A stretch of DNA of 64,000 nucleotides from the NCBI RefSeq assembly GCF_000143415.4, contig NW_003314321.1:62001-126000 (forward strand), given 5' to 3'. This stretch comes from Selaginella moellendorffii. Taxonomy: Eukaryota; Plantae; Lycopodiophyta. Position numbers and translations under genes: made by a program. How positions within the stretch are numbered: position 1 is the first letter of the stretch; the number at the start of each line of letters is the position of its first letter. The notes under the pieces were generated by a model. It worked only from the letters and a program-made list of their open reading frames with translations. It did no database searches and was not told the DNA's origin. Shown here piece after piece: positions 5,954 through 61,250 of the stretch.

Positions 5954-6761
5954 TGTGAGACACAAAATCCCTAGGCCCCAAAGTGGAGCCGAAAGGGCAC
6001 CACGTGGTAGTGGCCGAAGTGAAAGCCAAACAAGCATAACACGTTTGAATTAAAAGTTCTGACTTGAAAAGGTTAAGAGTGGAAGTGGAACTCCCAATGA
6101 AGTGCTCGAGGAACAAGCACGAAGCAAACCGTGAGTGAGTCTCTAGAAAAGGGGACACAAGAGGACCAAAACATAACAAGTGGAAGAGTCCGAGGTGAAG
6201 TCCAAGATGGAGTCCGAAATGGAGTCTAAGATAGAGTTTGAGATGGAGTCTGAGATAGATCTGAGATGGAGTCCGAGATGGACCCAAGATGGACCCGAGG
6301 TTGAGTCCGAAACAGACTTGAGATGGAGTCTGAGATGGACCCGAGATGAACCCGAGGTGGAGTCCGAGGTGGAGTCCGAGATGGACCCGAGATGGACCCG
6401 AGATGGAGTCTGGGAGATGGAGTCCGAGATGAACCCAAGATGGAGTCTGAAATGGAGTCCGAGATGGACCTGAGATGGAGTCCGAAGTCAAGATCGAGAC
6501 CGAGACCGGGACCAAGACCGAGACCAAGGCCGAGGCCGAGACCAAGCCCAAGCCTGAGTCCGAGTCCGAGTCCGAGTCAGAGTTTGAGTTCGAGTCTGAG
6601 GGGGTGAAAGCCTAAAGCATTTGTCTCCCAAACCTTGGGGGGTTTGGTGAACTCCAAAAGTATAGTAAAGGGGAAGACTGCAGTGGAGTTAATTTGGCCA
6701 GGAAAGGCTAGTTTGGCCTGGGAAGGCTGTACCCAGGTCTTGGGTACATTGGGTCCTTACA
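5954..6761 (+). mobile_element. LTR-like unit (solo or truncated) with a hexamer array (~6185-6600)
   Basis: Starts TGTGAGAC and ends TTACA, with TTAC on both sides. Its 5' part is homologous to 46956-47180. Confidence 0.6.
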
Positions 6762-7007
6762 TTACTTGTGGACCAGCTTGGACAGACAGCAGCAATCACT
6801 TGTTAGTAGCCTTAAAAAATGCTCATATGCTTTCAGAGAATGGGGAACTCTATACCTAGGGAAAGAATCGCGACTACCAGCTCGGAATTCTTGGACTTAA
6901 GGATGAGCAACTAGATCCAGTCCCAGTACAATTTCCACAGGCTCTTCATGACAAAACTCCGGTAGAAGTGTTGAGTGTTTCTTGTGGAGCTAATCACAGG
7001 GTTTGTA
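6756..7007 (+). pseudogene. Inverted fragment of the RUG3 3' end
   Basis: Matches 12144-12406 in reverse complement (SENGELYT*GKNRDYQLGI...VSCGANH). It has a Trp-to-stop change and retains a damaged intron. Confidence 0.9.
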
Positions 7008-7089: not shown

Positions 7090-8860
7090 ATGTGGGCGCC
7101 TGCCCACGACTCTTCTTCTTCCCAGCGCGGCTGGATCGATCTCGAGGAGGTCTTGCGCGCTTCAGGTACGCTGATAGATCGATTGTCGATCGATCGCTTT
7201 CGCGAGTTCTGGGCCTGATTATTCCAGAACCAGGCGCCGCAGAAGCTGAGCAATGGCTACGCAGGTTTTATGTCGTGGCTCGCGAGCCGGAACGATGATG
7301 GCGATCTATCGCACTGGGACTTGGCGACAATCTGGCAGGCAGGTCGAGTATTGGTTTTAGTTTTTTCCTTTTGATTCATTGATGAGTGAGTCTATGACGC
7401 AGGGGATTGTTTGCGAGCCGTCCAGTTCGTGCGGGAGAACGCATGCTGGAAATTTCTCTAGACTTGGTCTGTGTTGTTTGGTCCTTTCTGCTTTTCCTCT
7501 TAATGTTGGTTCTTGTTTCGCCCAGATGATAGCTCCTAGTGATCTTCCTGACCAGCTCAGCACGGTTTTGCCCAGCACTGTTAAGCCGTGGACCAAACTT
7601 GCTCTTATTGTCCTCATGGAACGCTACAAAGGCCAGGCAAGTTTACTCTCAACATTTTCGTCTTCGCTTCGCTAAATTTTTCTCGCAACAGCTCCAGTCG
7701 TCAGCTTGGGCACCATACATCTCGTGTCTTCCTGAACCAGCGGGGCTCGACAACACGGTACTCGACTATCGAGTTTTTGTTTCTCAAAAGTTTCAAGTGC
7801 GTAGTTTCTTTGGGAGGACACCGAGCTAAGTTACTTGAGGGCGAGCCCTTTATACGGCAAGACTCGTGAGCGGCTGGAAATTATAACAACTGAGTTTGGC
7901 CAAGTGCAAAACGTAAGTACTTCGGGTAGTTTTCTATTTTGCCAGCTTTCATTCACTTAGTGTTTTTTACTGTTTTTTTCTTTTCCGAATGGTTTTATTC
8001 AAGGAGGAAACTTTTTTACTTTGATGCTTGAAGGATTTTTGTAAGTGTTTCTGACGTACTTGCCTGTGTACTGGAGCAGGCACTTGATGTTTGGCCTCAA
8101 CTATTCGGTAAAGTGTCTGTTGAAGACTTCATGCATGTATACGCCACAGGTACAGGAAGCAAGCTTGTTTCTTGCTAGTTTTGTTCGTCCTTCCTTTGCA
8201 GTTTTTTCTCGTCCACTAGCCATTGGAGAGGACTCGACATTAGTAATGGTGTGTCTCTCTTTATTTCTGTTTACTTCCTTGTGTACAATATAACGCGGCG
8301 TTAGCAGATACCAATGCTCGATTTTTTCAACCACAACGCAGCCAGCTTTGCGAAGCTCTCATTTAACGGGCTTCTCAACTACGCAGTTGTAAGATACGCC
8401 TGAAGTTCTTTCTTTTTCTTTTCCGTACCACAAGCAGGTCACAGCGGACAGAGACTGTGCTGAAAACGATCAGGTATAGGCAGTGGTCTTTGTTTTGTTT
8501 TCATGTTTCATTCGGCTTTGCAGATTTGGATAAACTGTGGTGATCTTTCAAACGCAGAGCTTGCACTTGATTATGGCTTCACTGTGCCTGAAAATCGGTA
8601 TGACGAGGTAATGAGCGTGCGAAGAGGTGTGGTGCTGAATCACTTTTCACAAACTGCAGACTGATCTGTTGACGCAATTCCCGGAAATGAACACGATAAT
8701 TAAAGATCAACTTGGCGGAAACACGCTGTAAAGCATTCCTTCTTCTTTGAAGAGACTACTTGTTTGTGCTTCTCAGGGGTCAAAAACCACTTCCAAGGTT
8801 CTCCTGTGTGCCTGGAAGTAGCACGGCGAATCGAGACGCATGAAAAATCAATCCTGGTTG
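7090..8860 (+). pseudogene. SET-domain (Rubisco LSMT-like) methyltransferase pseudogene; inverted duplicate of the 16.5-18.3 kb gene
   Basis: Near-identical to the minus-strand copy but with two 8-bp deletions (~7103, ~7310) and the changes INYG->INCG, ENPYD->ENRYD and DYAEN->DCAEN. Confidence 0.85.
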
Positions 8861-9507
8861 GGCCCTTCTCTCGAGCTTTTATCGTTTTAACGCCGTCTCG
8901 CAGGAACTAAATCAACACTCATGGAGGTCGAGAAGTAGACGACTTCTAGCTGCCGCCGTCCTAGATGGTGAGCTGAGAGTTTTGAAGAGCGTGAAGCATC
9001 GGCTGGATGGCACGCGCCAGGCATAACTTTGGGAGACAAGATCTTTTTCTGGTTTCGTGAAGGCCTTGTTTTCTCCAGGAAAGCACAGCGTTGCTTGATG
9101 TAAGCCGTGGAATATAAATCGGTAAGCGCGTGCATGCGTCGGATGAGACGGTTGGAAAACGACAGGAGGAGCGACTGCCGTATAAGATCGCCGCCCCCGG
9201 CTGCCATGCTGATCTCTCCTGCTAACACTGCTTTCTCCTTCTGGCTTTTCTTCAAGTTCTAAACAGTGAGCGATAGCGTGATCGGCTTTCCTGATTGCAA
9301 GCTCGATCCAGACGAAAGGATGGAGTTTTTAAGTCGAGCTGTTGGTCTATCGGATCGTGCGTCATCTTCGTCCTCAGGGACGCTTCGAATTTCCAAATTA
9401 AAGAAAGAAAGGACATTATTTCCATAGCTTATATAAAATGCCATTGCCTTTTTGGGTTAGGTATACTTTCCAGAACAGGAAGAGAGCATTAAAGGCAAGG
9501 AAGTGAA

Positions 9508-36294: not shown

Positions 36295-38197
36295 ATGGAG
36301 AACGAGCAGCTCCTGCTTGAGAAGCTCGAGAGCTCGAGCTGGAGTCCCGGTGAGGCTCAGGATAAAGTTCTGGCCGAGATCCTGGAGAAGAATGCCGCCA
36401 CAGACTACTTCAACAGGCATGGATTGCGAGCAGCAACCAAGGAGGTGTTTCGGCAGAGAGCGCCGGTCATTGAGTACGAAGACATCAAGGATGAGATCAA
36501 CCGAATTGCCGACGGCGAGGCCGCTACTTTGCTCTGTGCGAATCCTATCGCGGATATGTTCACGAGGTAAGTTTATCTCTAGTTTTTGTCGATTTCGCAA
36601 AGACTTTGTGGTAGCTCTGGGACCTCCGGCGGGGCTCACAAGCTGTTCCCGAAAGTGGAGGGACACTATGCTGTGTCGAAATACTTCTTTGATCTTGCAA
36701 CCGCTCTTCTCAACAGGTATTCGTCGTCATTTTCCTCCAAAGCTTATGATTGTTTGTTCCTTCGAATCTGTAGGGACTTGCCTGGACTGAGGACCGGCAA
36801 GGCTTTGTACTTCTTATACGTGAGAAGTGGCCGCAAGACTCCTGGAGGGCTTCCAGCTTATCCAGCACTGACGGGATACTACAACAGTCTAGAGTTCCGC
36901 AACCGGCCTTTCGATCCAAGCAACGATTACACAAGCCCCCTGGAGGTGATACTTTGCACGGACAGCGTGCAAGCCTCCTACTGCCACTTGCTGTGTGGTT
37001 TGATCCACGCCCGAGACGTGACGAAGCTGGGCTGCTTCTTTGCGTCGGTGTTCGTGAGGTCGATAAGGTGCCTCGAAGCCTGGTGGCAGGAGCTTTCCAG
37101 GGACATACGAACGGGAACTTTGTCCGAGAGAGTTGTGGATCCGGCTTGCAGAGAAGCCGTGGAGAAGATCTTAAGGCCGGATCCAGAGCTTGCGAACGTG
37201 ATCGACGAGGCGTGCTCCAGTGGAAGCTTGAAAGGAATCGTCCGGAAGCTGTGGCCCAGTGCCAAAGCTATCGACACAGTCGTCACCGGTGCTATGGAGC
37301 AGTATGTTGGAGAAGTCGACTATCTCACCGACGGCCTGCCAATAGCGTCGATGATCTACGCGTCCTCGGAGTCTTTCTTTGGAGTGAATCTCAAGCCGCT
37401 TTGCGAGCCGTCCCAGATCTCCTACATGTTTCTGCCCGAGACGTCCTACTACGAGTTTCTGCCGGTGGCTCGATCGGAGGAGAAAGCTTCTCGTGAAGAG
37501 CCCGTGGAACTCGTTGATGTGGAACAAGGCCACGAGTACGAGCTTGTGATCACGACAAACGCTGGTATAGTTTCCAGTTCATTGTCCTGGCTTGTATCTT
37601 TATCTTTTCTGGCTCTTTCCATCAGGATTGTACAGATATCGCATGGGTGACGTTCTTAGAGTCGAGGGCTTCCACAACAAAGCTCCGCTCTTCAGCTTCG
37701 TCTGCCGGACGAACGTTCTACTTAGCATCGACTCGGACAAAACGGACGAGAAGGAGCTCCAGACCGCAGTCATGAACGCGTTTGCGGCATTGCGAAATGG
37801 CGTCACGAGCAAGGAGGGGGAGGCAATAAGATTGACGGACTACACCAGCTATGCCGACCTCTCCTCCAATCCTCCGCACTACGTGATTTACTGGGAGCTG
37901 TCCAGCGAGCTTCACTTGGAACCGGAAAAAGCAGGGGAGTGCTGCTACAAGATGGAGGAATCACTGAGCGTGGTGTATCACAGGGGGAGGATGGAGAGAT
38001 CCATTGGAGCTCTGGAGCTGAGGCTTGTGACACCAGGGACTTTCAATCGAATCGCTGATGATGCCGCATCCAGGGGTGGAAGTGTTTCTCAATTCAAGCT
38101 GCCAAGGTGTATCAAGAAAAATGCGACCAGGATGCTGGAAATCGTGGAGAGTGGTGTATACCAGCAGTACTTCAGTCCAAGAGCACCGAAGTATTAA
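36295..38197 (+). CDS. GH3: GH3 acyl-acid amido synthetase, 4 exons
   Basis: T|SSGTSGG, YASSE, YEF.P, ITTNA|GLYRYRMGD, LLSIDSDKTDE, HYVIYWE, QFKLPRC. Confidence 0.95.
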
Positions 38198-38369
38198 TAT
38201 TATTTTGATTGTTTGATCGTAAAAACTCTAAAAATTACAGCAAAATTTTATTATTATACTCAATTGCTAGCAACTATCGTACTATGAACTGCATAGCACA
38301 TAACTGTTGACAAAGCGTCAGTAGAATATATGATCAATAGTTTCATCACCTTAACTTAGAGAACACTAA

Positions 38370-38428
38370 CAATCTCTCTCTTTCTCTGTGTGTGTGTGTG
38401 TGAAAGAGAGGGAGAAAGAGAGAGAGAG
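38370..38428. repeat. Compound (CT)n(GT)n(GA)n microsatellite
   Basis: Read directly, between the convergent GH3 and Hint genes. Confidence 0.8.
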
Positions 38429-38497
38429 TTTAGAGCAATACATTGAAATTCAAATGTTTAAAATCCCACTTTATTTACTATTGTTTTTCTACATTTT

Positions 38498-39496
38498 TTA
38501 GTATTTTGGTTTTGAAAAAAACGTCCAGAAAACTGTAGCTCTCACAATGCCACTAATATAATTGAATATAATACCCTTATTTGTTACAAAGCTGTATATC
38601 TTCAAATAAATCTCAAAAGTTAACTTTTCATATAGAACTTGAATAGGAAACAAAATAAAATGATATATGTCAGGTAGTAAATGACTTAGTTTAAAATATC
38701 TAAATAACCCATCTAAAAACCAATCACTATGTGTTGAAACTACAATATCATTTACAATTAAATCTCCAGATAATATGAATGGATTATAAAGGCCATATTT
38801 TTTTACGACATAAATATCTAAAAATACTTAAATAAGTACAAGAAAAATAATTTTTTCTTACCTGTTATATTGTAAGGTATAATCTTTCCTGATTTTTCAT
38901 CTAATGCTAATAAAACATCAGTTAATATAACATCATTAGCATATTTATAAATAGTTGATTTTGAATCTAAAGATAAAACTATTAGTGGCCATAATAACTA
39001 TTTCAAACATACTTACTTATAACAGGTATATAATGAAATGAAGATAACTCAATGCTTTTTCTATTACTAATATCAATATGAATAAACTCTTTATAGGCTT
39101 TAAGATCTTGGTGTCCAAAAGCATATATATCAGAATAATCTATAATACCTTTTTTATTTTGAATTGCAACCTACCCATATTAACATCACCATCAAAGGCA
39201 AGAACTAAAACTCTATAAAATTACAAACCTTATCACCAATAGAAATATCCTTCACTTGTTTTTTCTTACCATTATAAAGTTTTATAATAGCATCAGCTAT
39301 TACAAAAAAAATGTATTCTTAAAACAAGAAAAGGAGTAAAATTACCTGGAAAACAACTTGGACGTACATAACAATTAAAGTTCCTGCATTCATAACCTTT
39401 TATGCAATCTTCATCTTTTGTACATGGATCAACTTGAGTTTTAATTAATGGTAAAACATTAAGAACTAGTGATAAAGAGAAAAGAAAAGCATTCAT
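38498..39496 (-). CDS. Secreted Hog-type protein: signal peptide + 4-Cys peptide + Hedgehog/intein (Hint) domain + SRR-like tail, 265 aa; exons 39496-39346, 39296-39229, 39170-39017, 38966-38862, 38817-38498
   Basis: Four GT-AG introns (49, 58, 50, 44 bp) give one 798-nt frame containing CFPADAIIKTYNGKKKQVKDISIGDKV, YSDIYAFGHQD, IELSSFHYI, YANDVILTDVL, GLYNPFILSGDLIVNDIVVSTHS and YHFILFPIQVLY. Confidence 0.9.
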
Positions 39497-39562
39497 TTTT
39501 TAAGTCTATGAAAACTGATATATAACTGGTGACTATATATAGATTGGTTGGTTTTTGTTATT

Positions 39563-41308
39563 TTATGGACTTTCTAATAAACCTGTTATTATATTTGCTA
39601 AGTCAATTTCAATGTCTTCTTGTAGAAGATGTCCACCCTGAAAATAATATATTAAAACTAATGTTGAAATATTTGCTATACCTTGTCTAAAGTGATTAGT
39701 TTAAATTGGAACTCCTCACAAAAGGTTTTGAGTGATTTATAATTTAGCCATCTGTCGTTCAAACCACCAATAAAATATATAGGTGTTTCCCAGTTTTTAG
39801 ACGTTAATAAAGATCGAACTGATAAAATTGAATCCTATAGCCAAATGTTTAGCAAGAATATGTTTATTCATTAGAGAAATGTATTACCTTTAACTCTTTT
39901 TTAAAACTTTTAATCACAGACTTTAGTGCAAATCCAGCTGATCCTGATGATAAATATGGCTTTCTATAAACCATTTTATCCTCCTCTGTTATAGCATAAT
40001 AACTTATTCTTGACATAGCACCATCACTTGCTTTAAAAGGATCCTGACATAAGCAACTTTTTATAGCTAGAAAGCTCTTGTAATTCTAGTTTACCTGGGA
40101 AAATATATCACCTAAGAATAAATTTGTAAATTCTAAGAGATTTGATGGTAAAGTACTGTGTTCTTTAGATACCTGTATAAGAAATAATAAATGAAATAAT
40201 GTTTTGTGTTTCTTGATTACTTACTGGTGGATTAATCATGATAAGTTTAACTATTTTGAAAGGATTTGCGCTAATATATTCTACGACTGGAGGTGTAAAA
40301 TGTCCCTGTCTTAAAAAGCTTTAAAAAATCCTTTTAAAAAGATTTAGTGTTTAGTTACCTGAGCAACTATAGAAATTTGGTTTGATTTTAATCGATCCAC
40401 CAAACAGCTAAGCGCATTTGTATACTCTGCAGGTTTTAAGAAAAAACAAAAACAGTCTACAAAATTAAAAACAGTCTATGTTCATTACCTTGAGTTGTAT
40501 AATTAAATCCATTACCATATAATGGTTTGTCCGAGAATCCAAAGCCTATCCATGATGATAGAACAGAAGACATAACTATATAACTTACCCAACCAATCAA
40601 CTGCTATAACGTGATAATCTTTGGCAAGTATAGAAATAACATGTCTAAAAGAATAAGCCTGAAAATCTACATATGTTAGCTCGTCCTAACTAATACACCA
40701 TCACCTGAGAACATAAACCATGTAAAAGCAGTATTGTGTGATTATTATTTGTCCCTTCTTCAACGTAAAACCATCTGAGAAATATCTAATTAATGACTGT
40801 TAAAACCATCTATGCTAACCTCACCGATACTCATTTGAAGATATTTGAGATTGTGCACCCAATTTCATACCAAACAAAGGTTCTTTCACTGTGTTTGATG
40901 ATCCTTGAGGAGAGTATGCATACATCTGCAGTATGTAAAAATATTTGAAAATTAGCTTAAGCTTAACTATGAAAACAGAATTAACTTACAAAATCACCAC
41001 GTGCCCACCAGTCATCTGTTTTATCTCTTTCATCCGAATATTTTCCTACATTATTGTAAGAGAATTTATCCCTGAAAAAGAAGAACAAGAACAAGAACAA
41101 GAAGAGACTTACCACCATAGAAAGAAAAGCCATCTCCTTTAGATTGAGGTGCAATCTCCTAAAAGGAGGGTTTTCTCTTCTATTTGAAGACTGGAAGTCT
41201 ACAGACTTACCCCATCATCTGCATATAGAGCATTCACTCTTGAGAAAGAGAAAGATTTCCTCTTCAATTTCTTCTTCACCGTAGATGGGTTGAGAATCTG
41301 TGCGCCAT
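39563..41308 (-). CDS. Alpha/beta-hydrolase, plant haloalkane-dehalogenase-like family, multi-exon
   Basis: WFYVEEG, ILLLHGLCSQ|AYSFR, AVDWL|GFGFSDKP, IVAQ|GHF, QDPFKASD, GGHLLQED. Start codon less certain. Confidence 0.8.
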
Positions 41309-41720
41309 GGAAGGAACCCAATTGCACAGCCAGGCTCCCCATACTCATATCTAAAATCTACAGCGCATAGAGTTCACACAAGCACATATAAGAATCTAAG
41401 ATTTAGTTTATAGAATCAAAGTTTTACATTTCTAATGCTAAATTCCAGAGTTGGGACTTGAAATGTTTCTTGGAGATCATCAGAGACTTAAATAGAGTAG
41501 AAAAATCACAGTGGGTCTCATTTTCGTTTTGCAGACACTGTGCCTCATCACTTGATCTTCTCCATTGTGATATCCATCAGAGACTTAAATAGAAAAACAA
41601 TCATCCTTGATTTTCATCCTCATTTTCTCATCACCTGGCGTCACAGAAAGAAGAGCACTGGCGGCTACTCACACCCTAAAGGCTAAAACCTATGCCCAAG
41701 CCCTAAATTAGGTTGATTTT

Positions 41721-43918
41721 ATGTGGGCAAATATTCTTCCCAGGAGCTCGTCCTCTCGCGATGAAATGGGGGCGATCTCGGGCGCTGCCGCCAATGCAGC
41801 GCGATCCAAGCTGCCGCCGCTGCTGGATTTGCGCCTGGATCGGAAGGTATACAGGCCAGGTGATGCTGTCACCGCTACGGTCGAGATTTCCAACCCTGCC
41901 AGCGCTTCCGATGGCGGCGACTTGATTTTGGTGGAAGAATTTGCCGTGGAGGTGAGAGGGACGGAGAAACTGGATCCGCAATGGATCGTCACTCCAAAGC
42001 CTCCCGGATTGAAGCAAAAGAGAGGTTCGTGCCTGGCGAATTTCCAATTTTTTTAAAGCTCTTCACAGGCGAACGGATCTTTCTGGAATCTTGCGGACCT
42101 TTGGTTAGTGGCGTCTTCGTCGAGGGCGGATTGACGAGATCATGTAAGTTTTGGTTTCCCTGTGGTGAAGCGATTAAAAATGTCGACTGTCTTTTAAGTC
42201 GTAAATTTGCTTAGATCTTGTACGCACGGTTCTACCAAAGCTTCTTCCTCCGTCCTTCAGAGGCACAGCAGTACGATACTTTTACCATCTCACCGCAACT
42301 ATTCGGTGGAAATTTGTTGCCACTGAAAATGGTAGTTCATCGGTACAAGCTGCTCTTCCGCTGGTATGTAATGTTTTATTGTCCTAATATGAGAACGCTG
42401 GAACCATATGTAGGAGAAGCGCATTCCCATAACCGTTTGGACGATGCCTAACAACAGTGGACTTTCAGCTGAGCTCAACGAAAGCCATAAAAATGGCGGT
42501 CAGTTCTTTTTGGACTTGTCAAGCAATCTCGTTAAAACAAGTGTCTCAATGCACAGGCATTGTTCCATCGTCTCTTGTGGAGGCAGAATTGCAGTGGAAA
42601 GAAAATAGCGCCTACTCAGAATGGGTGAGTTGACTACAATGCCCACTAGTTGAAGTCTTGGCAAATGCAACGTTTTTATCTGGCAGACGGGGACGGCTAG
42701 TACTTTCTCAGGTTTAGAAGACGATATATCTAGTCAAGGATCCGAAAGTGTTTCCCATAGCCCGAAGGGAAGTCTGGAGAACAACTTTGATCGGCTGGTG
42801 CTCCAGTCTCCTGCATTGACTCCAAGGACGCAGCCGAGAAGCGAAGAGTCAAATCGACCAGCATTGAAGAAGCAGATATTGATGGCATCTTTTTCAGACG
42901 AAATCCCGAGTAAGTTACTGGAAGTTTGTTGTCGTGTTTTGTTTTGAGATCTATCTTTGCAGAACATTCTCAAAGGACACTGGACACATCGCTCTCTGGG
43001 AATTGGAGCCCATGGAATCGGTTCCCGATGGATGGTTTTCCAAGTGAGCAAGAGGATGACTCGAGAACCGACTCCTCCCCAGGTGAATCTATTTTCGGAG
43101 GCGTCAAACTAGAAGTTGAGCTGTTTCTTTCAGGCCACGTGAAGGGGAAAGCCTACAACATCAGGCTTGGCAATCAGGTTCTTGTGCGTATTTCACCCAA
43201 GAATCCTGATGCGGTTCATTACTTTGGAGACACTGTAAGTGCACACTTTCTCTCTCTCGTTTTTGACGTTACTCGTTGCAGATTGCTGGAGTTATCAGCT
43301 TTCCAGAAGAAAGTGATTCTCGAAAGTGCTTAGAGGTGAGAGAGATAATGATTGTGAAGTATCCAGCTGTAACAAGAGGAGAATGCAGGTTTCAGTGGTG
43401 CTGGAGATTCGCGAAGTACTCAACGTTTTGCATTTGCATCCTTCCCGGAAGAACTCGCAAGTCATATCCAAGGTACTGTTTGACTTTCCTTTCTTGTTCC
43501 TTCTCACGCTAGACAATCAACGCTAAACGATGCACAGATTCAATCCGAGTATCACGAAGTTGTCGCGGATGTTTCACAAACGCACTTCCTTTTCTCCATC
43601 CCTCTAGATGGCCCGGCTTCCTTCTCAACTCCTCACGTCACGGTACAGTGGGTTCTTCGTTTCGAGTTCGTGGCCACTCCAGGGAATGTTGAGTGGTCGA
43701 AGTACGCACATCCTCTCGAGATCAAAGACAGGGAGACGGGAGAGTGGACGCTGCCCATCACTGTTCATGCTCCACTGCCCCGGACGCACGGAGTAAGGAA
43801 GGACAGGCCAGTAGCTTCACTGAGAGATTTTTGGCTTCAATCCCCCAAGGCATCGGACTGGGTTGGCACTCCGCTGGGCTCACCGATTTTAGCCGGCCCG
43901 TCCAACGGTCACTTCTGA
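41721..43918 (+). CDS. RGP1: RGP1 (Ric1-Rgp1 RAB6 GEF subunit)-like, multi-exon
   Basis: LDRKVYRPGD, LPKLLPPSFRGTAVRYFY, YNIR...FGDT, FLFSIPLDGPASFSTPHVTVQWVLRFEF, WTLPITVH. Confidence 0.8.
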
Positions 43919-46900
43919 GGAAATAGAGAATGTCTATTTCTTTTTTCTCCAGAGAATGTGTCCTCGTCTAAGAGTTCGTGGTGTGTCACCAAATAGCCTT
44001 TGTTGAAGCTCTTGGCATTTAGTAACTGGTATCTTGTCCTTCAAGTAGATCGCCCGACGCTAACATGTTTCCCAAGGATATTTACTTGTAAAAAATTATT
44101 TTGTAAAAATAGAGTCTTTCTTGTGTAAGAAAAAACTCACTTTAATTCATTATTCTTCTAAAACATCTAAGAATGACAAGTTTTCTGAGGCACATGTATA
44201 TATATACTGTAGGATAAATATGCTAATTATAATACTCTGGACCGAATCAAAATATGTGATCAATTTTTGAAACAAACAATATCTCGAAAAGTCTTTCCAA
44301 TGACATCATCCAACCCATGCTAATATAAGATAAGACTAAAAATAAAAATTTGGTCAAGTTTTTCAGTTTGCAGTTTTTCTCACGGTTCACCACAGCTCCA
44401 AAACTTGACATTTAACGTTCTGACTAGCACCCAACACTAGAACCTGGCTGCTAGTGCTTGCTGAATGATTGTGTTATTGTCCAGGAAGGTTTTCGTTAGT
44501 TCTGGTTGCTGATGTGGCCTATAGGGATCGTTTATAAGAGGAATAGAAGGGCACTCTCCACTCCCATAGCTACACTTGAGCTTCACCTCTGTGCTGGCAT
44601 GATTGACATTTGGCCTGATAGTGCCAAGGGATTGGGAAGGAGAACTTATGCATTGGTGATTTCATCTTGGCTTTGTATGCTTTGACCTCAAACAAAGGCG
44701 AGTGGATTTCTTTCTTTCTTTCTCTTTCTGGTGTGCTTGGAGACAAGCTCTAGCTTATTACTGCTTGAGATGAAAGCTAACAAAAGTAGTGCTACAGTAA
44801 CTTAGTCATGGAATAAGGGAGGCATGTTTAATGCAAAACAAGATTGAGTAGTAACCTGGCTTTTCATCTAGTGAGTGGGCATAAGTTGAATATTTGCAAA
44901 CTTCACATTTGGTCCTGCAAAGCAGGATACAATGCTTAAATCACATCTGAAGAAACTATATGTCTTTACATTGGGTTTGCATAGAAGAACACTTCGATGC
45001 TTTATAGAAGTTTTATCTATACATGACTTAAGACATTTGGCTCATTTAATGTTTACAATATCTCTTGTAGAGACTAGAAAAAGTCTTAAACAAATATAAG
45101 AGGATGATATAGCTGATCTAGGAAACTTATCATGTAATTACAATTGCTCAACCATGATTTTTTACTTGCTTTTCTGCTAATAACAATTTTTTTCAAATGT
45201 TAGATTAAAAAATAGATAGCGAATAAATAAATATTGCAAATGTAGATATTATTATTTTATAGTTGTATCATATAGTAAATATATATTAAAACCACAGAAA
45301 ACCAATATAAAATCTTTAGATTGAGCTATTTGAAAAGCATTAAATATGTATAGATGTTGTCTTTTAATTGTATAAACATAAATTCTTTATTTAATTTTGT
45401 TTTACTTACTATTGAGCTATGCTATAAGAGGACAAAAAGAGACTATCTGGATAAATAGTTTTTAAATATGTGATTTACTTGTTTAGTTTCATTATTCACA
45501 TCTCAAGTGTAAAAGGAAAAATAGTAAATTATCTCATATATATCTTGATATATACTTTTTCTACTTCCTCAGCTATGACAATCAAAACATAATTGTAAAT
45601 TATGAGGGAAGGTACAACTCCAAAGAGAAGGTGTATCTGGGGTTAGTGACATGGCAAAAAGATTGTAGTATACTGTAAAATATATCAATTTAAAACACAT
45701 GTGTTCTTGAATTTTTTAAACACATATGTGTGACTAATAAAATAATCTTTTGGATCTAACTTTTTGTCAAGGTATAGGCATGCATTGGTGATTTGGCAAA
45801 GTTGAGATTAGTGCTAAGTATGCAATTTTGTAGCACTATGTAAAATTAGATTCCATATCAGTTTATTTGGTATGTTAGTACAGTTTAGGCATTGGTTAAG
45901 GGCTTGTAGTAAAGTGTGAACTGGATTTGAGTGCCTTTTAGAAGCCATTACCATGCACTTGAGGCATTTTATATAAAGAGGGTAATAAAAAGCACTTTAT
46001 GAGTGAGTGATTTTGCAATAAATAAAGAAGATTTTGCTTATAATTAAGAGAAGGCTACAAAATAAGAGATTTTAACTTTATTTAGAATGGATTGGTGCAT
46101 ATTGCACTATTAAAGCTCAGAAGAGGTGCATCCTCTCAAGAGTGTTGTTGCAAGTGCTTTTTAAAGAGCTTCTCTTACAACACTGAGAACTTTATGATAT
46201 ATAAGATTATGTATGTTAATGGCAAATTAAAAGATGTTGGATATAAAGTCAGCTACTACATTAATCTATATTTGCCCAAAACAAGTTTTGTGAAGGAGAT
46301 TAAAGTTGATTCTTTATGTGTTTTTCAATGTGGAGTTATCCATGGAGCTTTGGTGAATTTACAATAAATTTCCCCCACCGCATAAAATTCAGTCTTGATG
46401 CAACATATAGCAAGCTAGAGCCTTGGCACAGGTATTTAGATGGAATCATTAATACCACTATGTGTTTGAAATTTCTAAATAATACCACACACTTTGTGTT
46501 ATTTATCTACATAGGGAGCCACTATATCACAAGCATACTCATGTTAATGAACAAGAGAGGATTAACTCTTTATAAATGCTATTGTTAGGCAGTTTTACAA
46601 TTTTGCTAGCCAAAACACATATGTAAAGACTACATGGGGGAGTTCAACAGGGCCTAACGTGAGAAGGCCATAATGTAATATTTATATATGATTCTTAAAT
46701 TCATAACTAGGTGAAATTAAATCTTTCTTTATGTAATAATAATGTATTTGTGGTGGATCAAACACTTTTAGAGTGATATGTGGTGCAAGATGGCTTGTTA
46801 CTTGAAAATGATGACTCTGACTATATATTGCCATTCCCTTATTGACATAAAGACTTATGGCTTGCTTGAAGTCCCTTATGTTGAATTTATACAACACCTT

Positions 46901-46955
46901 CACAAATATGTGAACTTGCATATAATGCACAATCTAACAAGGATATATGTATGAG

Positions 46956-49179
46956 TGTAAAACAGAAATCCTAAGCCCCAAAGTGGAGCTAAAAGTGTGT
47001 TGAGTGGCACTGGTTGAAGTAGAAGTCCAACGAGCATAACATATTTAAACTAAAAGCTTTGGTTTAGAAAGTTGAGAGTGGGAGAAAAACTCCCAAAGAA
47101 ATGTTCAATAAATAAGTATAAAGCGATCAATAAGTAAGTTTCTTAAAAGGGATATAAGAAGGACTAACACATGACAAGTGTTGTGACACGTGAAAGTGTC
47201 GGGACTGAGTCTGAGACCAAGTCCAAGACGGAGTTCAAGACCAAGTCTAAGATCAAATCTGAGATCAAGTTCGAGATCGAAACCGATATAGAGACCAAGA
47301 CTAGGTCAAAGATGGAGTCCAAGGCCAAGTCTGAGTCTGAGATTGAAACCAAGACCAAGACTAAAACTAAGACTGAGTCCAAACCTAAATCCAAGTCCCC
47401 TGGTGAAAGCCCAAGTGATCTCTTACCAAACCTAGAGGGTTTAATAAATCCTTATAAAATAATAAAGGGAAGATTCAATGGAACCAATTTGGTTAGGGAA
47501 GGTTATTGTTACTGAGTGGATGTTACTATATGGTGGGTAATGATATGAACATTGAAAAGTCCAAAGCTAAAGTAAACATAGATGAACAAGTGAAGTGACA
47601 TTGTGAAGAGTTCAAAAGTTAACTTTAGCTCTCCCAAAAGATCGAATAGTCAATACTCCTAATTCAAGTGTGAGTGGCATTCTTGGGGTAGTCTAATAAT
47701 ATTTTATAAATATGTTCTGCATAATGAGTTTATGAACTAGCGATTTCCGTAGAGGAGGTTATATGCTTGTGTTAAGTAAAATACAGAGCTTGTATCCATG
47801 GCCAGTTACCTATTTAGATACCTTGTATGGCTCATTGGAACTTTACTCTAGCTACATGGGTAAGGCACCCCAGTGGCAAAAGGTGGGGGGAGTACCTATG
47901 AAGCTTTTATTAAGCTATAGTGTTTTAAAATATTGTCCCAAAATTTTAAACTGTGGAAAGGAAGAAGAGTGGTCCCTTTACTTCATGACTAAGAGTATAA
48001 TCACATGGTGATGAAGTCCCAAAAGTTAATGGGATTTAGTAGCTGAGCCATCATGCTTTATCCTAATGGCAGTGTTGGTGAGCATTACCATAAATGAAGG
48101 GGATTTGATGAAGATTGAAGAAGGGATATTGAGGGAGGGTGTTCTTTATATCTAAGGGCATCCTAAGGATGTTAAAGTGTGGACAGATGACCTAGTTTTG
48201 GAAAGATAGGACTGTGGTATAGGTGGTTTTAAACTACCAATGAGATACAAAAGAACAGACATAACCTTAATATAACAAGTTGAGATATCGATGGTATCTT
48301 TGGGTGTTTGAAGTAGAATCAAACATGTAGAACACTTAAATTAAGTGCAAAGTCGGGGTGGTTTTAAGATTACCTTTGAGGGTTAGCAAATTTCCCAACT
48401 TGGAATAAGGACTTATAAAGGTTGTGAATAATACTCCTCTAAGTGGTTAAAGGCATCGTTGAGTGACTAAAGTAGAGTAGAAAGATTAATCACTTACAAT
48501 GAACATAGAACAAGTGATTTAGAGCCAAGATTCAAGAGATCAAGATGTCCTTATCCTTGGTGGTGGCTAGATGTTGCAAATATGACTTTAGGTATCGAAA
48601 GTTATTTGTCAGCTAGTCCTTATGGACACTCTTACCTTATTGCCATGATGGCAAGAGTTTGGTATTGTTGGTTTTCTTTATCAGCCCCTCTTGTTCAAGT
48701 GTTAGTAAACTGGGCTTAGCACCTATAGTTAGCCAAATTGTTGCGAATGTGACTTCAGGTATCGAAAGTTACCTGTTGACTAGTCCTTACGGACACTCTT
48801 ACCTTACTGCCACGACGGCAGAAGGTCGGTATTGCTAGACCCTTCATTAGTCCCTCTTGTGCTAGTGGAGTTAATTGGGCATTTTGAGTATACTTAGATC
48901 GGACGAACATAAGGACGGAATTCCTACATGTTATTAGCTAAACATACTTAGCCTAGTAAGGAGTTCCTGTCTCGTTATATCTTGCACTGATTAGTGACAA
49001 GAACCCTCGCGTATTGAGATTAGTCCCTCAATATCGTTGGATGATAGCTTACTGTGTCTACCAAACACCCTCGCTATCATGCCCTTTGTGTTAGTCTCAT
49101 TTTGGTCTTAAATGCTAATTATGGAAAGTGTCTAGATTTGCTCATTTGGCATATCTACGGAATGTAGCACTCCTCCACA
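46956..49179 (+). mobile_element. Decayed LTR-like unit with hexamer array (~47205-47397) followed by degenerate retroelement sequence
   Basis: 46956-47500 is colinear with 5954-6710 (aaatcc.taRgccccaaagtggag..., array, GGTGAAAGCCC). No intact ORFs downstream. Confidence 0.65.
48572..48865 (+). repeat. Diverged two-copy tandem repeat, 167-bp period
   Basis: tgttgcRaatRtgactt.aggtatcgaaagtta... starts at 48572 and 48739. Confidence 0.75.
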
Positions 49180-59896: not shown

Positions 59897-60119
59897 TCTT
59901 ACTCCTCAGACCCTTCCAAAACTATATAATTGCTTATTGCTATTTTATAATGGGATTTTGATTAATTCTCTTAATCATGTATATAAATTTATATATTAAA
60001 AAGTAATAAAATCAATATACAATCCAAATTACAATCATTCCAGATGTCAATCACTAAAGAAGTATTTTAGTTAATACTTCTAAAATTATCATAATGGAGT
60101 TAAATTTCCCTAGATCCAT

Positions 60120-60121
<2 letters not shown>

Positions 60122-60170
<49 letters not shown>
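60122..60170. repeat. (AT)n microsatellite
   Basis: Read directly. Confidence 0.95.
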
Positions 60171-60174
<4 letters not shown>

Positions 60175-61250
60175 TATACAGACATTACACTATCCTTTCA
60201 TTTAGAGGATGGAAAGTTGATGATGATAAGTTATATAAAACATCTAAAACTTTTACTAGGTGATTATAGACTACTACAAGAATTTGAAGCACCTATAAAA
60301 CCATCAAATATAATTGTTTATAATCATGAATAAAACAAAACTTAAAGCCATGGCACAAATATCAATTGACCAAGGAATCTTAATGAACTAATTATAACTC
60401 CAAGTGCAATTGCTAAATACTCAAATCAACCTCAAAGACTTAATTTTAAACTAAAATAAAGGATTTCAAAAGCCACTACAATTTATAAAGCATTATTTTA
60501 ACAAAGAATATATCACATTTCTAAGTTTGCCCATCAATGATCCTTTGAGATCATTATTAATTTAGACTCGTAACCATTAGCAAAATTTACCTTTACATCT
60601 TTCCTTTAATAAGCTCTATTTCGTTAAAGTGGGAATTGTCATTATCCCACTTGTAAAATAAGGTTTCCAAACCTTTATATAGTATATAAATATAACAAAA
60701 TTCAACTGCATTGAGGCACATGCCATTTTATTTTAAACAAGGAAATGTTTACTCAATCACTTCTCCTCCCCCTGCCACTACTTCACCTCTCTCTTCTCCT
60801 TGTCATTGTCGTCCAATTTCTTTCCATCCTTTTAATATTGGCTTAGTTGCTCCGAGTCTAGGTGGAGCCCAAGTCCCCATTCAATCTTTACTTTCCCCTT
60901 ATTAATAAAACAACTTCGTAGACTTCCAAAAACATGCTGTAACATTTCTAGTATAATGCAAATCCTCTCAAAGAATTGTCTTTTAATATTAATACAATGG
61001 CATGGAACCCCATGCCATAATAAGTTACATTTTTAAATAAATACATGCCATCTCAGACTGTTATTTTTTGCCTCCAACGCCTATACAATAATCTTGGAAT
61101 TTCATCACTCTCCACACTATCAGGATTTAAACCCAATAGTAATGCCATCTCTTCTCTAATACGTCCACGCTCATGTTCAGTGGTCGAAGAACCCATCCGG
61201 TTGAGCAGATTATGGAGATGCGGATAGTGCTTGGTTAGACAATATACATG

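What the first reader, a model, noticed from the sequence alone, without database searches (positions are those of the whole stretch)
38498..39496. Hidden Hedgehog-like autoprocessing precursor: secreted 4-Cys peptide fused to a complete Hint/SRR (Hog) module
Seen: five short exons in AT-rich DNA splice into a 265-aa ORF. It has a ~20-aa signal peptide, then QVDPCTKDEDCIKGYECRNFNCYVRPS (27 aa, C-x5-C-x5-C-x4-C), then CFP at residue 48. Counting from that Cys, it aligns without gaps to the recalled Drosophila Hh Hint sequence: C1-F2, S22-I-G-D25, Y38-S39, F44, His46 (Asp46 in Hh), F55 and S69-x-x-H72 (TxxH in Hh). GLYNP...GDLIVNDIVVSTHS follows (Hh: GxYAPLT..GT.VV..V.ASCY), then an amphipathic YHFILFPIQVLY region like the sterol-recognition region. 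Known: Hint domains cleave before Cys1 by N-S acyl shift, and in Hh transfer the N-fragment to cholesterol. Inference: the plant may release a small disulfide-rich peptide that is C-terminally sterol/lipid-modified, as a signal or defence molecule. Caveats: Ser replaces the usual Gly before Cys1, Thr69 is Ser and the SCY Cys is Thr. I recall that Hog genes have been noted outside animals, including seed-free plants, but I know of no functional description.
Basis: partly seen in the sequence, partly recalled or inferred. Interest (0 to 1): 0.95.

Follow-up and report, generated by a model that had tools for sequence, protein, structure and literature searches.

The report
Unannotated silent Selaginella Hog gene copy
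This is a real, intact but unannotated and apparently silent extra copy of a spikemoss gene family, known since 2008, that joins a small secreted cysteine peptide to a Hedgehog-type self-cleaving domain; what the family does is still untested.

Summary
On the minus strand, five exons (39496-38498) joined by four GT..AG introns of 44-58 nt give a 265-aa ORF. It reads: hydrophobic leader, 27-aa four-Cys peptide, Cys48-Phe-Pro, Hint domain, helical tail.

The window is Selaginella moellendorffii scaffold GL377625.1. The protein scores 157 bits against that species' annotated 265-aa 'warthog protein 6', which has the same layout, and three of the four introns sit at identical positions and phases.

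A profile of the plant family matches Drosophila Hedgehog-C (6TYY, 1AT0) at E about 1e-25 to 1e-27. A model of the paralogue superposes on them (TM 0.87). Ser-1, His46, Ser69 and the missing Cys143 are family-wide traits, not defects of this copy.

So this is a new member of a known kind: Bürglin reported Selaginella and moss Hog genes in 2008, and this scan holds 29 other notes on Hog genes in the same genome.

This copy differs in four ways:
- It is absent from both protein collections.
- It lies in a 25-30% GC, CpG-poor island.
- It is the family's longest branch.
- It lacks the usual hydrophobic C-terminal tail.

It had zero RNA-seq reads while both neighbours were expressed. Cleavage and any sterol adduct remain inference.

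The parts
39346..39496 (-). Exon 1: start codon, hydrophobic leader (aa 1-20, 39437-39496), four-Cys cargo (aa 21-47, 39356-39436), Cys48-Phe-Pro (Cys codon 39353-39355). It ends in phase 1.
   Evidence: Hydropathy peak at residues 1-19. The intron after CFP is at the same position and phase as in the P0151 gene.
39297..39345 (-). Intron 1, 49 nt, GT..AG, 20% GC
   Evidence: The position is shared with L001:8001-8969. No RNA reads confirm it.
39229..39296 (-). Exon 2: Hint N-terminal strand up to the IGDK motif
   Evidence: Pfam Hint profile 17-38; alignment.
39171..39228 (-). Intron 2, 58 nt, GT..AG, phase 0 after GDK
   Evidence: Same position and phase as intron 2 of the P0151 gene, which uses a GC donor.
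39017..39170 (-). Exon 3: Hint core with the FGHQD motif (His46) and SSFH (Ser69, His72)
   Evidence: Pfam Hint profile 43-87; residue check.
38967..39016 (-). Intron 3, 50 nt, GT..AG. It has no counterpart in the P0151 gene. Left unspliced it would shift the frame into a stop.
   Evidence: The alignment shows no gap at this junction.
38862..38966 (-). Exon 4: middle of the Hint domain
   Evidence: No Pfam hit for this 34-aa piece alone.
38818..38861 (-). Intron 4, 44 nt, GT..AG, phase 1
   Evidence: Same position and phase as intron 3 of the P0151 gene.
38498..38817 (-). Exon 5: end of Hint (GLYNP, VSTHSDWFLD), the plant-specific conserved helical tail, a degenerate C-terminus, and the stop codon
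   Evidence: Pfam Hint profile 132-162. The exhaustive search gave 265 relatives, with conservation reaching residue 77 of this piece. No strong hydrophobic tail.
39519..39541 (-). Two TATA-like strings 45 and 28 nt upstream of the ATG, inside the 66-nt spacer that is also the 3' UTR of the upstream gene
   Evidence: A transcript contig of the upstream gene reaches 39490. These are consensus matches only, not shown to act as a promoter.
38470..38475 (-). AATAAA 23 nt after the stop codon
   Evidence: a consensus match only.

Best explanation
This is an intact, previously unannotated and strongly diverged paralogue of the short-cargo Hog gene family of Selaginella moellendorffii. The encoded precursor has a leader peptide, a 27-aa two-disulfide-type peptide, a Hedgehog-type Hint domain and a plant-specific helical tail. 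By homology, the protein would enter the ER. The Hint domain would then convert the Ser47-Cys48 peptide bond into a thioester, using Cys1 helped by Ser69 and His72. A nucleophile would resolve the thioester and release the small Cys peptide. His46, which is the family's native residue, would be the general base. The nucleophile could be water, a sterol or something else, and this is unknown. The copy has drifted to 25% GC under purifying selection and was transcriptionally silent in every sample examined. It is therefore either narrowly expressed or on its way out. Shown here: the gene structure, the homology, the Hint fold of a paralogue, retention of the catalytic residues and the lack of reads. 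Inferred: secretion, cleavage and any adduct.
For: Gene model and open frame. The window is S. moellendorffii GL377625.1. The spliced protein scores 157 bits against P0151, 'warthog protein 6', which is 265 aa long with the same leader, four-Cys peptide and CFPGDA layout; the cargo motif DC..G[FY].C is shared. Three of the four introns have the same position and phase as in the P0151 gene. The family profile matches 6TYY at 4e-27 and 1AT0 at 6.5e-25. The AF2 model of P0151 (pLDDT 83) superposes on 6TYY and 1AT0 with TM 0.87 and rmsd 1.9 A, ahead of BIL domains and inteins. Cys1, His46, Ser69 and His72 are all present and typical of the family. The copy keeps 22 of the 24 columns that are at least 90% conserved, but only 18 of 103 variable ones. 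Its 10 departures at columns that are at least 80% conserved are mostly conservative and AT-directed, such as V>I, T>I and R>Q. GC1, GC2 and GC3 are 0.36, 0.27 and 0.14, a coding-type gradient. D46H Hedgehog-C keeps its structure and activity (PMC9163320, PMC12054796). Both neighbouring genes are spliced and expressed in the species' RNA, so the AT-rich block is native DNA.
Against: No RNA read lay on 38359-39454 in three stranded RNA-seq runs, while the neighbours had depths of 2-13 and 60-125. No assembled transcript held the gene in about 20 other runs. The ATG lies 66 nt behind the stop of the upstream gene, inside that gene's 3' UTR. This copy is the longest branch of the family (1.28 against a median of 0.45) and has the lowest retention of moderately conserved columns, 30 of 40. 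It lacks the hydrophobic C-terminal segment and the preceding KYGG-type motif of its paralogues. Cys143, which animal Hedgehog requires, is Thr here. The window's own protein could not be folded or scanned whole, because a spliced sequence has no reference. Fold evidence therefore comes from a paralogue that is 38-42% identical.
Confidence: 0.72

Rival explanations
1. The gene is a silenced relic. It is no longer used, sits in a methylated AT-drifting block, and is intact only because it has not yet been hit by a disabling mutation.
For: Zero reads. It is unannotated. The island has CpG observed/expected of 0-0.5 against 0.7-1.2 in the flanks. It is the longest branch and has lost the C-terminal tail. 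There is no room for a separate promoter. Another follow-up in this genome found a decayed Hog copy.
Against: The shift to 43% FYMINK residues and 14% GC3 must have taken a long time. Throughout it, 265 codons stayed open (P about 2e-11 at this composition), four splice-site pairs stayed canonical and 22 of 24 near-invariant residues stayed in place. The equally AT-rich neighbouring gene is expressed.
Confidence: 0.22
2. It is a full Hedgehog-like sterol transferase. The helical tail binds a phytosterol and the cargo leaves as a sterol ester.
For: The Hint core is closest to Hedgehog-C. His at position 46 supports cholesterolysis in engineered Hedgehog-C with wider sterol tolerance (PMC9163320). 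The conserved tail is helical and starts where the SRR would. Bürglin reports SRR motif K in moss Hog domains (PMC2362128).
Against: The tail has no detectable sequence match to the animal SRR. Cys143, which forms the branched intermediate and is essential in Sonic Hedgehog, is absent and variable across the family (PMC12054796). No plant Hog biochemistry turned up in four literature searches. In nematode Hog proteins the adduct is likewise unknown (PMC2362128).
Confidence: 0.15
3. The AT-rich block is foreign DNA: a contaminant, an assembly chimera or a recent horizontal transfer from an AT-rich eukaryote with tiny introns.
For: GC falls abruptly from about 50% to 25-30% at 38250-41750. Introns are 44-58 nt.
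Against: Tiny introns are normal here: the GC-rich GH3 gene has a 61-nt intron. The adjacent AT-rich gene is spliced at 10 junctions by reads from this species and begins in normal-GC DNA. Three intron positions are shared with a Selaginella paralogue. The best tree places the protein beside the Selaginella short-cargo clade, with weak support of 63/20.
Confidence: 0.02

Closest known systems
S. moellendorffii 'warthog protein 6' (P0151, 265 aa) and SELMODRAFT_446381 (P0013, 275 aa)
   Same: Same species, same length class and same layout: leader, four-Cys peptide with DC..G[FY].C, CFP-type Hint and helical tail. Three intron positions are shared. phmmer scores are 157 and 149 bits.
   Different: Only 38-42% identical, whereas the annotated paralogues are 54-56% identical to P0013. 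GC is 25% against 45%. There is one extra intron. The C-terminal hydrophobic segment is missing. The window's copy is unannotated and without reads.
Plant Hog genes of Bürglin 2008 (pSm, pSl, pPp Hog; PMC2362128)
   Same: Secreted Hog-domain proteins of Selaginella and Physcomitrella in which the motif J cysteine is replaced by Ser, Thr or Asp. Here it is Thr.
   Different: That paper reports one sequence per species. The four-Cys short-cargo subtype and this locus are not mentioned in the passages read.
Drosophila and vertebrate Hedgehog C-terminal domain (PDB 1AT0; D46H mutant 6TYY)
   Same: Hint fold, Cys1, xxH motif, and position-by-position alignment without gaps up to residue 72.
   Different: His replaces Asp46 and Thr replaces Cys143. 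There is no recognisable SRR and no Hedge signalling domain. The cargo is only 27 aa.
Nematode Hedgehog-related proteins (warthog, groundhog, quahog)
   Same: Varied secreted N-terminal cargos are fused to a Hog domain whose tail (ARR) differs from the SRR and whose adduct is unknown (PMC2362128).
   Different: The RefSeq name 'warthog' is only an automatic label. No Wart domain is present, and the plant sequences form their own group.
Small Cys-rich secreted plant peptides (late nodulin/NCR type) and the Dickkopf N-terminal region
   Same: A leader plus a short four-Cys module. There are weak Pfam hits: Nodulin_late at E 0.006 and Dickkopf_N at E 0.003. P0151 also hits Nodulin_late at E 0.002.
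   Different: All scores are below the curated cut-offs, so this is resemblance only, not membership.

Membership tests
Hog / Hedgehog-type Hint domain (Pfam PF01079) | Sequence match to the Hint module | tested here: met
   Three exon pieces hit PF01079 collinearly, summing to about 47 bits against a cut-off of 29.7, although each alone is below it. The spliced protein scores 157 bits against P0151, which itself scores 93 bits on PF01079.
Hog / Hedgehog-type Hint domain (Pfam PF01079) | Hint fold closest to Hedgehog-C rather than to inteins or BIL domains | tested here: inconclusive
   Met for paralogue P0151: 6TYY and 1AT0 at TM 0.87 and E 1e-13, against BIL2 at 6e-10. The window's own spliced protein could not be submitted.
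Hog / Hedgehog-type Hint domain (Pfam PF01079) | Nucleophilic Cys1 after a small residue | tested here: met
   Ser47|Cys48. Cys is present in 73 of 73 family members. At -1, Gly occurs in 26, Ser in 17 and Ala in 6.
Hog / Hedgehog-type Hint domain (Pfam PF01079) | TxxH motif (Thr69, His72) | tested here: met
   The sequence is SSFH. Ser69 occurs in 48 of 112 family members, and His72 is present.
Animal Hedgehog autoprocessing (cholesterolysis) | Asp46 general base | tested here: not met
   It is His here and in 100 of 102 relatives. Engineered D46H Hedgehog-C is active (PMC9163320, PMC12054796).
Animal Hedgehog autoprocessing (cholesterolysis) | Cys143 of the SCY motif (branched thioester) | tested here: not met
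   It is Thr here. Across the family the counts are A 45, S 40, V 36, C 23 and T 19.
Animal Hedgehog autoprocessing (cholesterolysis) | Sterol-recognition region after the Hint core | tested here: inconclusive
   A conserved helical tail exists. The Pfam and PDB profile matches end at the Hint core.
Animal Hedgehog autoprocessing (cholesterolysis) | Cys1-dependent self-cleavage with sterol transfer | not testable with these tools
   This needs biochemistry.
Seed-free land-plant Hog family (Selaginella, Diphasiastrum, Ceratodon, Adiantum) | The plant motif block FGHxD ... xHS[DE]WFLD ... LP..YQ..L.P.R.LY | tested here: met
   It is present with three AT-directed departures: T>I at residue 174, Q>H at 212 and R>Q at 219.
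Seed-free land-plant Hog family (Selaginella, Diphasiastrum, Ceratodon, Adiantum) | Shared intron positions with a Selaginella paralogue | tested here: met
   Three of three P0151 introns are matched in position and phase.
Seed-free land-plant Hog family (Selaginella, Diphasiastrum, Ceratodon, Adiantum) | Hydrophobic C-terminal segment | tested here: not met
   All four paralogues tested (three from Selaginella, one from Ceratodon) have a 15-aa window with Kyte-Doolittle above 1.8 at the C-terminus. The window's protein has none, and about 9 residues are deleted before it.
Seed-free land-plant Hog family (Selaginella, Diphasiastrum, Ceratodon, Adiantum) | Transcription | tested here: not met
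   Zero reads in X3-X5 and no contig in X1. Only a few samples were examined, so absence is not proven.

The most novel reading that the evidence does not exclude
[quoted passage not shown] This locus would encode a narrowly expressed four-Cys member. It would be the first protein sterolation system outside animals, and a natural counterpart of the engineered D46H Hedgehog enzyme.
Probability: 0.1. Interest if true: 0.8.

Novelty: new member of a known kind. Interest (0 to 1): 0.33.

Why it matters
Nobody has tested what plant Hog proteins do. The family pairs a Hedgehog-like self-cleaving domain with tiny secreted peptides (four-Cys, Pro-rich or only a few residues). It naturally carries the His46 base that chemists engineered into Hedgehog-C. 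That makes it a good system for asking whether peptide sterolation or lipidation exists in plants. This particular locus adds little to that question. It shows that the Selaginella annotation misses at least one intact member. It also gives an example of a gene that kept its frame, splice sites and catalytic residues while drifting to 14% GC3. The expressed, annotated paralogues such as P0151 are the better objects for experiments.

Tried and rejected
Pfam, PDB and structure prediction were run on exon pieces, on the family alignment and on paralogue P0151. Whole-protein comparisons were done only in the sandbox.
- A first exon-finder for the P0151 gene failed because its intron 2 has a GC donor. 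The gene was then read by eye.
- Three single-exon ORFs near the gene were looked up to obtain the official gene calls over the locus, and none was on record. A GH3-exon homology search for the same purpose missed the full-length protein because of the length limit. 'Unannotated' therefore rests on absence from both protein searches.
- Rebuilding the neighbouring gene's full coding sequence from the read junctions failed, because at least one intron was not listed.
- Zhao et al. 2019 (PMC7106946) is not held, so the D46H facts come from PMC9163320 and PMC12054796.
- Foreign origin of the AT-rich block was considered and rejected, as described under the rival explanations.
- Placement with the two four-Cys paralogues alone is neither supported nor rejected (AU p = 0.18).

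Full report
**What is there.** Reading the minus strand of 38400-39600 and splicing five exons gives 798 nt. The exons are 39496-39346, 39296-39229, 39170-39017, 38966-38862 and 38817-38498. The product is a 265-aa protein followed by a stop. The four introns are 49, 58, 50 and 44 nt long, and all are GT..AG.

- Residues 1-20 are a hydrophobic leader.
- Residues 21-47 are a 27-aa segment with the pattern C-x5-C-x5-C-x4-C.
- Cys48-Phe-Pro follows. Counting from Cys48, the sequence has S22-I-G-D25, Y38-S39, F44, H46, F55, S69 and H72.
- The protein has only five cysteines: the four in the cargo and Cys48.

At this composition (25% GC) a 265-codon open frame has a chance of about 2e-11. The other five frames of the stretch carry 16-35 stops each.

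**Is it a Hint/Hog protein?**
- The exon pieces hit Pfam Hint PF01079 in collinear order, at profile positions 17-38, 43-87 and 132-162. Each piece is below the cut-off, and together they sum to about 47 bits.
- An exhaustive HMMER search with the last exon found 265 relatives. Similarity runs about 45 residues past the Hint core.
- In the sandbox, the whole spliced protein scores 149-157 bits against annotated Hint proteins. The alignment crosses all four exon junctions without junction gaps.
- A profile of 26 family members plus the window's exon pieces matches Drosophila Hedgehog-C. The E-value is 4e-27 for 6TYY (the D46H mutant) and 6.5e-25 for 1AT0. Inteins are only marginal.
- An AlphaFold model of the closest same-architecture paralogue, P0151, has mean pLDDT 83 and a Hint core above 95. 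It superposes on 6TYY and 1AT0 with TM 0.87 and rmsd 1.9 A, ahead of BIL domains and inteins.
- The window's own protein could not be folded, because a spliced sequence has no reference. It is 38-42% identical to P0151.

**Whose gene is it?** A 357-aa ORF of the window is exactly a gene of Selaginella moellendorffii GCA_000143415.2, scaffold GL377625.1. The window is therefore about 62001-126000 of that scaffold.

S. moellendorffii has at least 14 annotated Hint proteins, which RefSeq names 'warthog protein 4' or 'warthog protein 6'. P0151 (265 aa) and P0013 (275 aa) have the same layout as the window's protein and share the cargo motif DC..G[FY].C. The P0151 locus carries three tandem copies.

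The three introns of the P0151 gene lie at exactly the positions and phases of introns 1, 2 and 4 of the window's gene. These fall after CFP in phase 1, after GDK in phase 0, and after the IT dipeptide (NIT in the window's protein, PIT in P0151) in phase 1. Intron 3 is an extra intron of this copy.

Relatives also occur in Diphasiastrum, Ceratodon and Adiantum. Bürglin (2008, PMC2362128) had already reported Hog genes in S. moellendorffii, S. lepidophylla and Physcomitrella. He described signal peptides and a motif J cysteine replaced by Ser, Thr or Asp.

This scan holds 29 first-stage notes on Hog genes in the same genome. Two follow-ups reached similar verdicts on other copies: one known expressed gene and one decayed copy.

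**The 'caveats' are family traits.** The counts across the retrieved family are:
- Cys1: 73 of 73.
- Position -1: Gly 26, Ser 17, Ala 6.
- Position 46: His in 100 of 102.
- Position 69: Thr 62, Ser 48.
- His72: 110 of 113.
- The Cys143 equivalent is variable: A 45, S 40, V 36, C 23, T 19.
- The next residue is a near-invariant His, in 158 of 166.

In animal Hedgehog, D46H keeps both structure and activity and widens sterol tolerance (PMC9163320). Cys143 is required there and forms a branched thioester (PMC12054796). If the plant enzymes cleave, they must do so without that intermediate.

The tail after the Hint core is conserved among plants and predicted helical. It has no detectable match to the animal SRR. 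PF01079 coverage stops at position 162 of 213, and the PDB alignments end at Cys143.

**What is special about this copy.**
- It is not in either protein collection. The exhaustive search found nothing better than about 55% identity over a short stretch to its largest exon. The word-based search listed no hit on a 1,246,421-bp contig. It is therefore unannotated.
- It lies in a block of 25-33% GC at about 38250-41000. CpG observed/expected there is 0-0.67, mostly below 0.5, against 0.6-1.3 in the flanks.
- GC1, GC2 and GC3 are 0.36, 0.27 and 0.14, against 0.52, 0.43 and 0.47 for the P0151 gene. FYMINK residues make up 43% of the protein, against 22-28% in paralogues.
- It is the longest branch of the tree, 1.28 against a median of 0.45. 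It sits only weakly beside the Selaginella short-cargo clade (support 63/20). Its composition violates the tree model.
- It keeps 22 of the 24 columns that are at least 90% conserved, but only 18 of 103 variable ones. Its 10 departures at columns at least 80% conserved are mostly conservative and AT-directed, such as V>I, L>I, T>I, Q>H and R>Q. That pattern indicates AT-biased mutation filtered by purifying selection.
- It lacks the hydrophobic C-terminal segment and the motif before it that the paralogues carry.

**Expression.** Three stranded RNA-seq runs of the species were laid on 37400-41500, with about 12% of each run read.
- The GH3 gene on the plus strand reaches depth 60-125.
- The AT-rich gene directly upstream on the minus strand (39563 to about 41345) reaches depth 2-13. 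Ten introns of 43-64 nt are confirmed there.
- Bins 38359-39454 have zero reads in all three runs.
- Reads map normally in the equally AT-rich neighbour, so this is not a mapping artefact.

About 20 indexed runs of the species hold next to none of the stretch's words. The 0.04 share in two of them comes from the neighbour's 3' UTR, whose contig ends at 39490.

The Hog ATG at 39496 lies 66 nt behind the neighbour's stop, inside that UTR. Two TATA-like strings and a downstream AATAAA exist, but such matches are cheap in AT-rich DNA. So few samples cannot prove that the gene is silent.

**Verdict.** This is a genuine Hog precursor gene with a four-Cys mini-cargo, but it belongs to a family published in 2008 and annotated in this genome. 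The sterol-adduct idea is untested, and the absence of Cys143 and of a recognisable SRR weakens it. This copy is silent in the data at hand.

The most likely reading (about 0.7) is a constrained, narrowly expressed, divergent paralogue that self-cleaves at Ser47|Cys48. The main rival (about 0.2) is a silenced relic. No functional study of plant Hog proteins turned up in four literature searches. The family-level question therefore stays open and is worth testing on the expressed paralogues.

Noticed in passing
window 38250-41750; also 44500-47000 and 60000-61000: There are sharp AT-rich blocks of 25-33% GC in a window that is otherwise about 47% GC. The first block is strongly CpG-depleted (observed/expected 0-0.5) and holds two genes. 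The upstream gene starts in about 44% GC DNA and runs into the block. The pattern fits long-term cytosine methylation and deamination. The other two blocks were not examined.
   Followed up: partly
window 39563-41345, minus strand: A gene with at least 11 tiny introns (43-64 nt) is expressed at low level. By eye it looks like an alpha/beta hydrolase (an LLLHG-type motif and a GGHLLQED ending). No family search was run. Its mRNA 3' end reaches 39490 and overlaps the Hog start codon.
   Followed up: partly
window 36586-38197, plus strand: A GH3-family gene (Pfam PF03321 relatives) is well expressed and has a 61-nt intron at 37564-37624. Nine sites show roughly half of the reads with another base (for example 37443, 37487, 37710), consistent with two haplotypes. 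A minor acceptor one base further on (37626) appears in 3 reads of one run.
   Followed up: no
window 38362-38431: A (GA)n/(GT)n-type microsatellite lies between the convergent 3' ends of the GH3 and Hog genes. The reads tool skipped it as a repeat.
   Followed up: no
L001:566-1534, 6019-6990, 8001-8969: Three tandem copies of the 'warthog protein 6' gene lie on S. moellendorffii scaffold GL377597.1. They are 95-100% identical in the last exon. Their second intron uses a GC..AG donor.
   Followed up: partly
family alignment: In the plant family the residue after the Cys143-equivalent position is a near-invariant His (158 of 166), inside an xHS[DE]WFLD block. This second conserved His has no counterpart in animal Hedgehog-C, which has Tyr there. 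Its role is unknown.
   Followed up: no
P0031 (309 aa, Logan transcript of unknown organism): A relative carries a hevein-type chitin-binding domain (Chitin_bind_1, E 6e-9, above cut-off) directly in front of the CFPG Hint start. P0006 of Ceratodon carries repeated Cys-rich modules with weak STIG1-like hits. The cargos of this family are thus very varied.
   Followed up: no
C-termini of P0151, P0013, P0020, P0006: The paralogues end in a hydrophobic stretch of about 15-19 aa that runs almost to the last residue and is preceded by small residues (KYGG-type). It looks like a membrane or GPI-type signal on the Hog fragment. No predictor was available.
   Followed up: no
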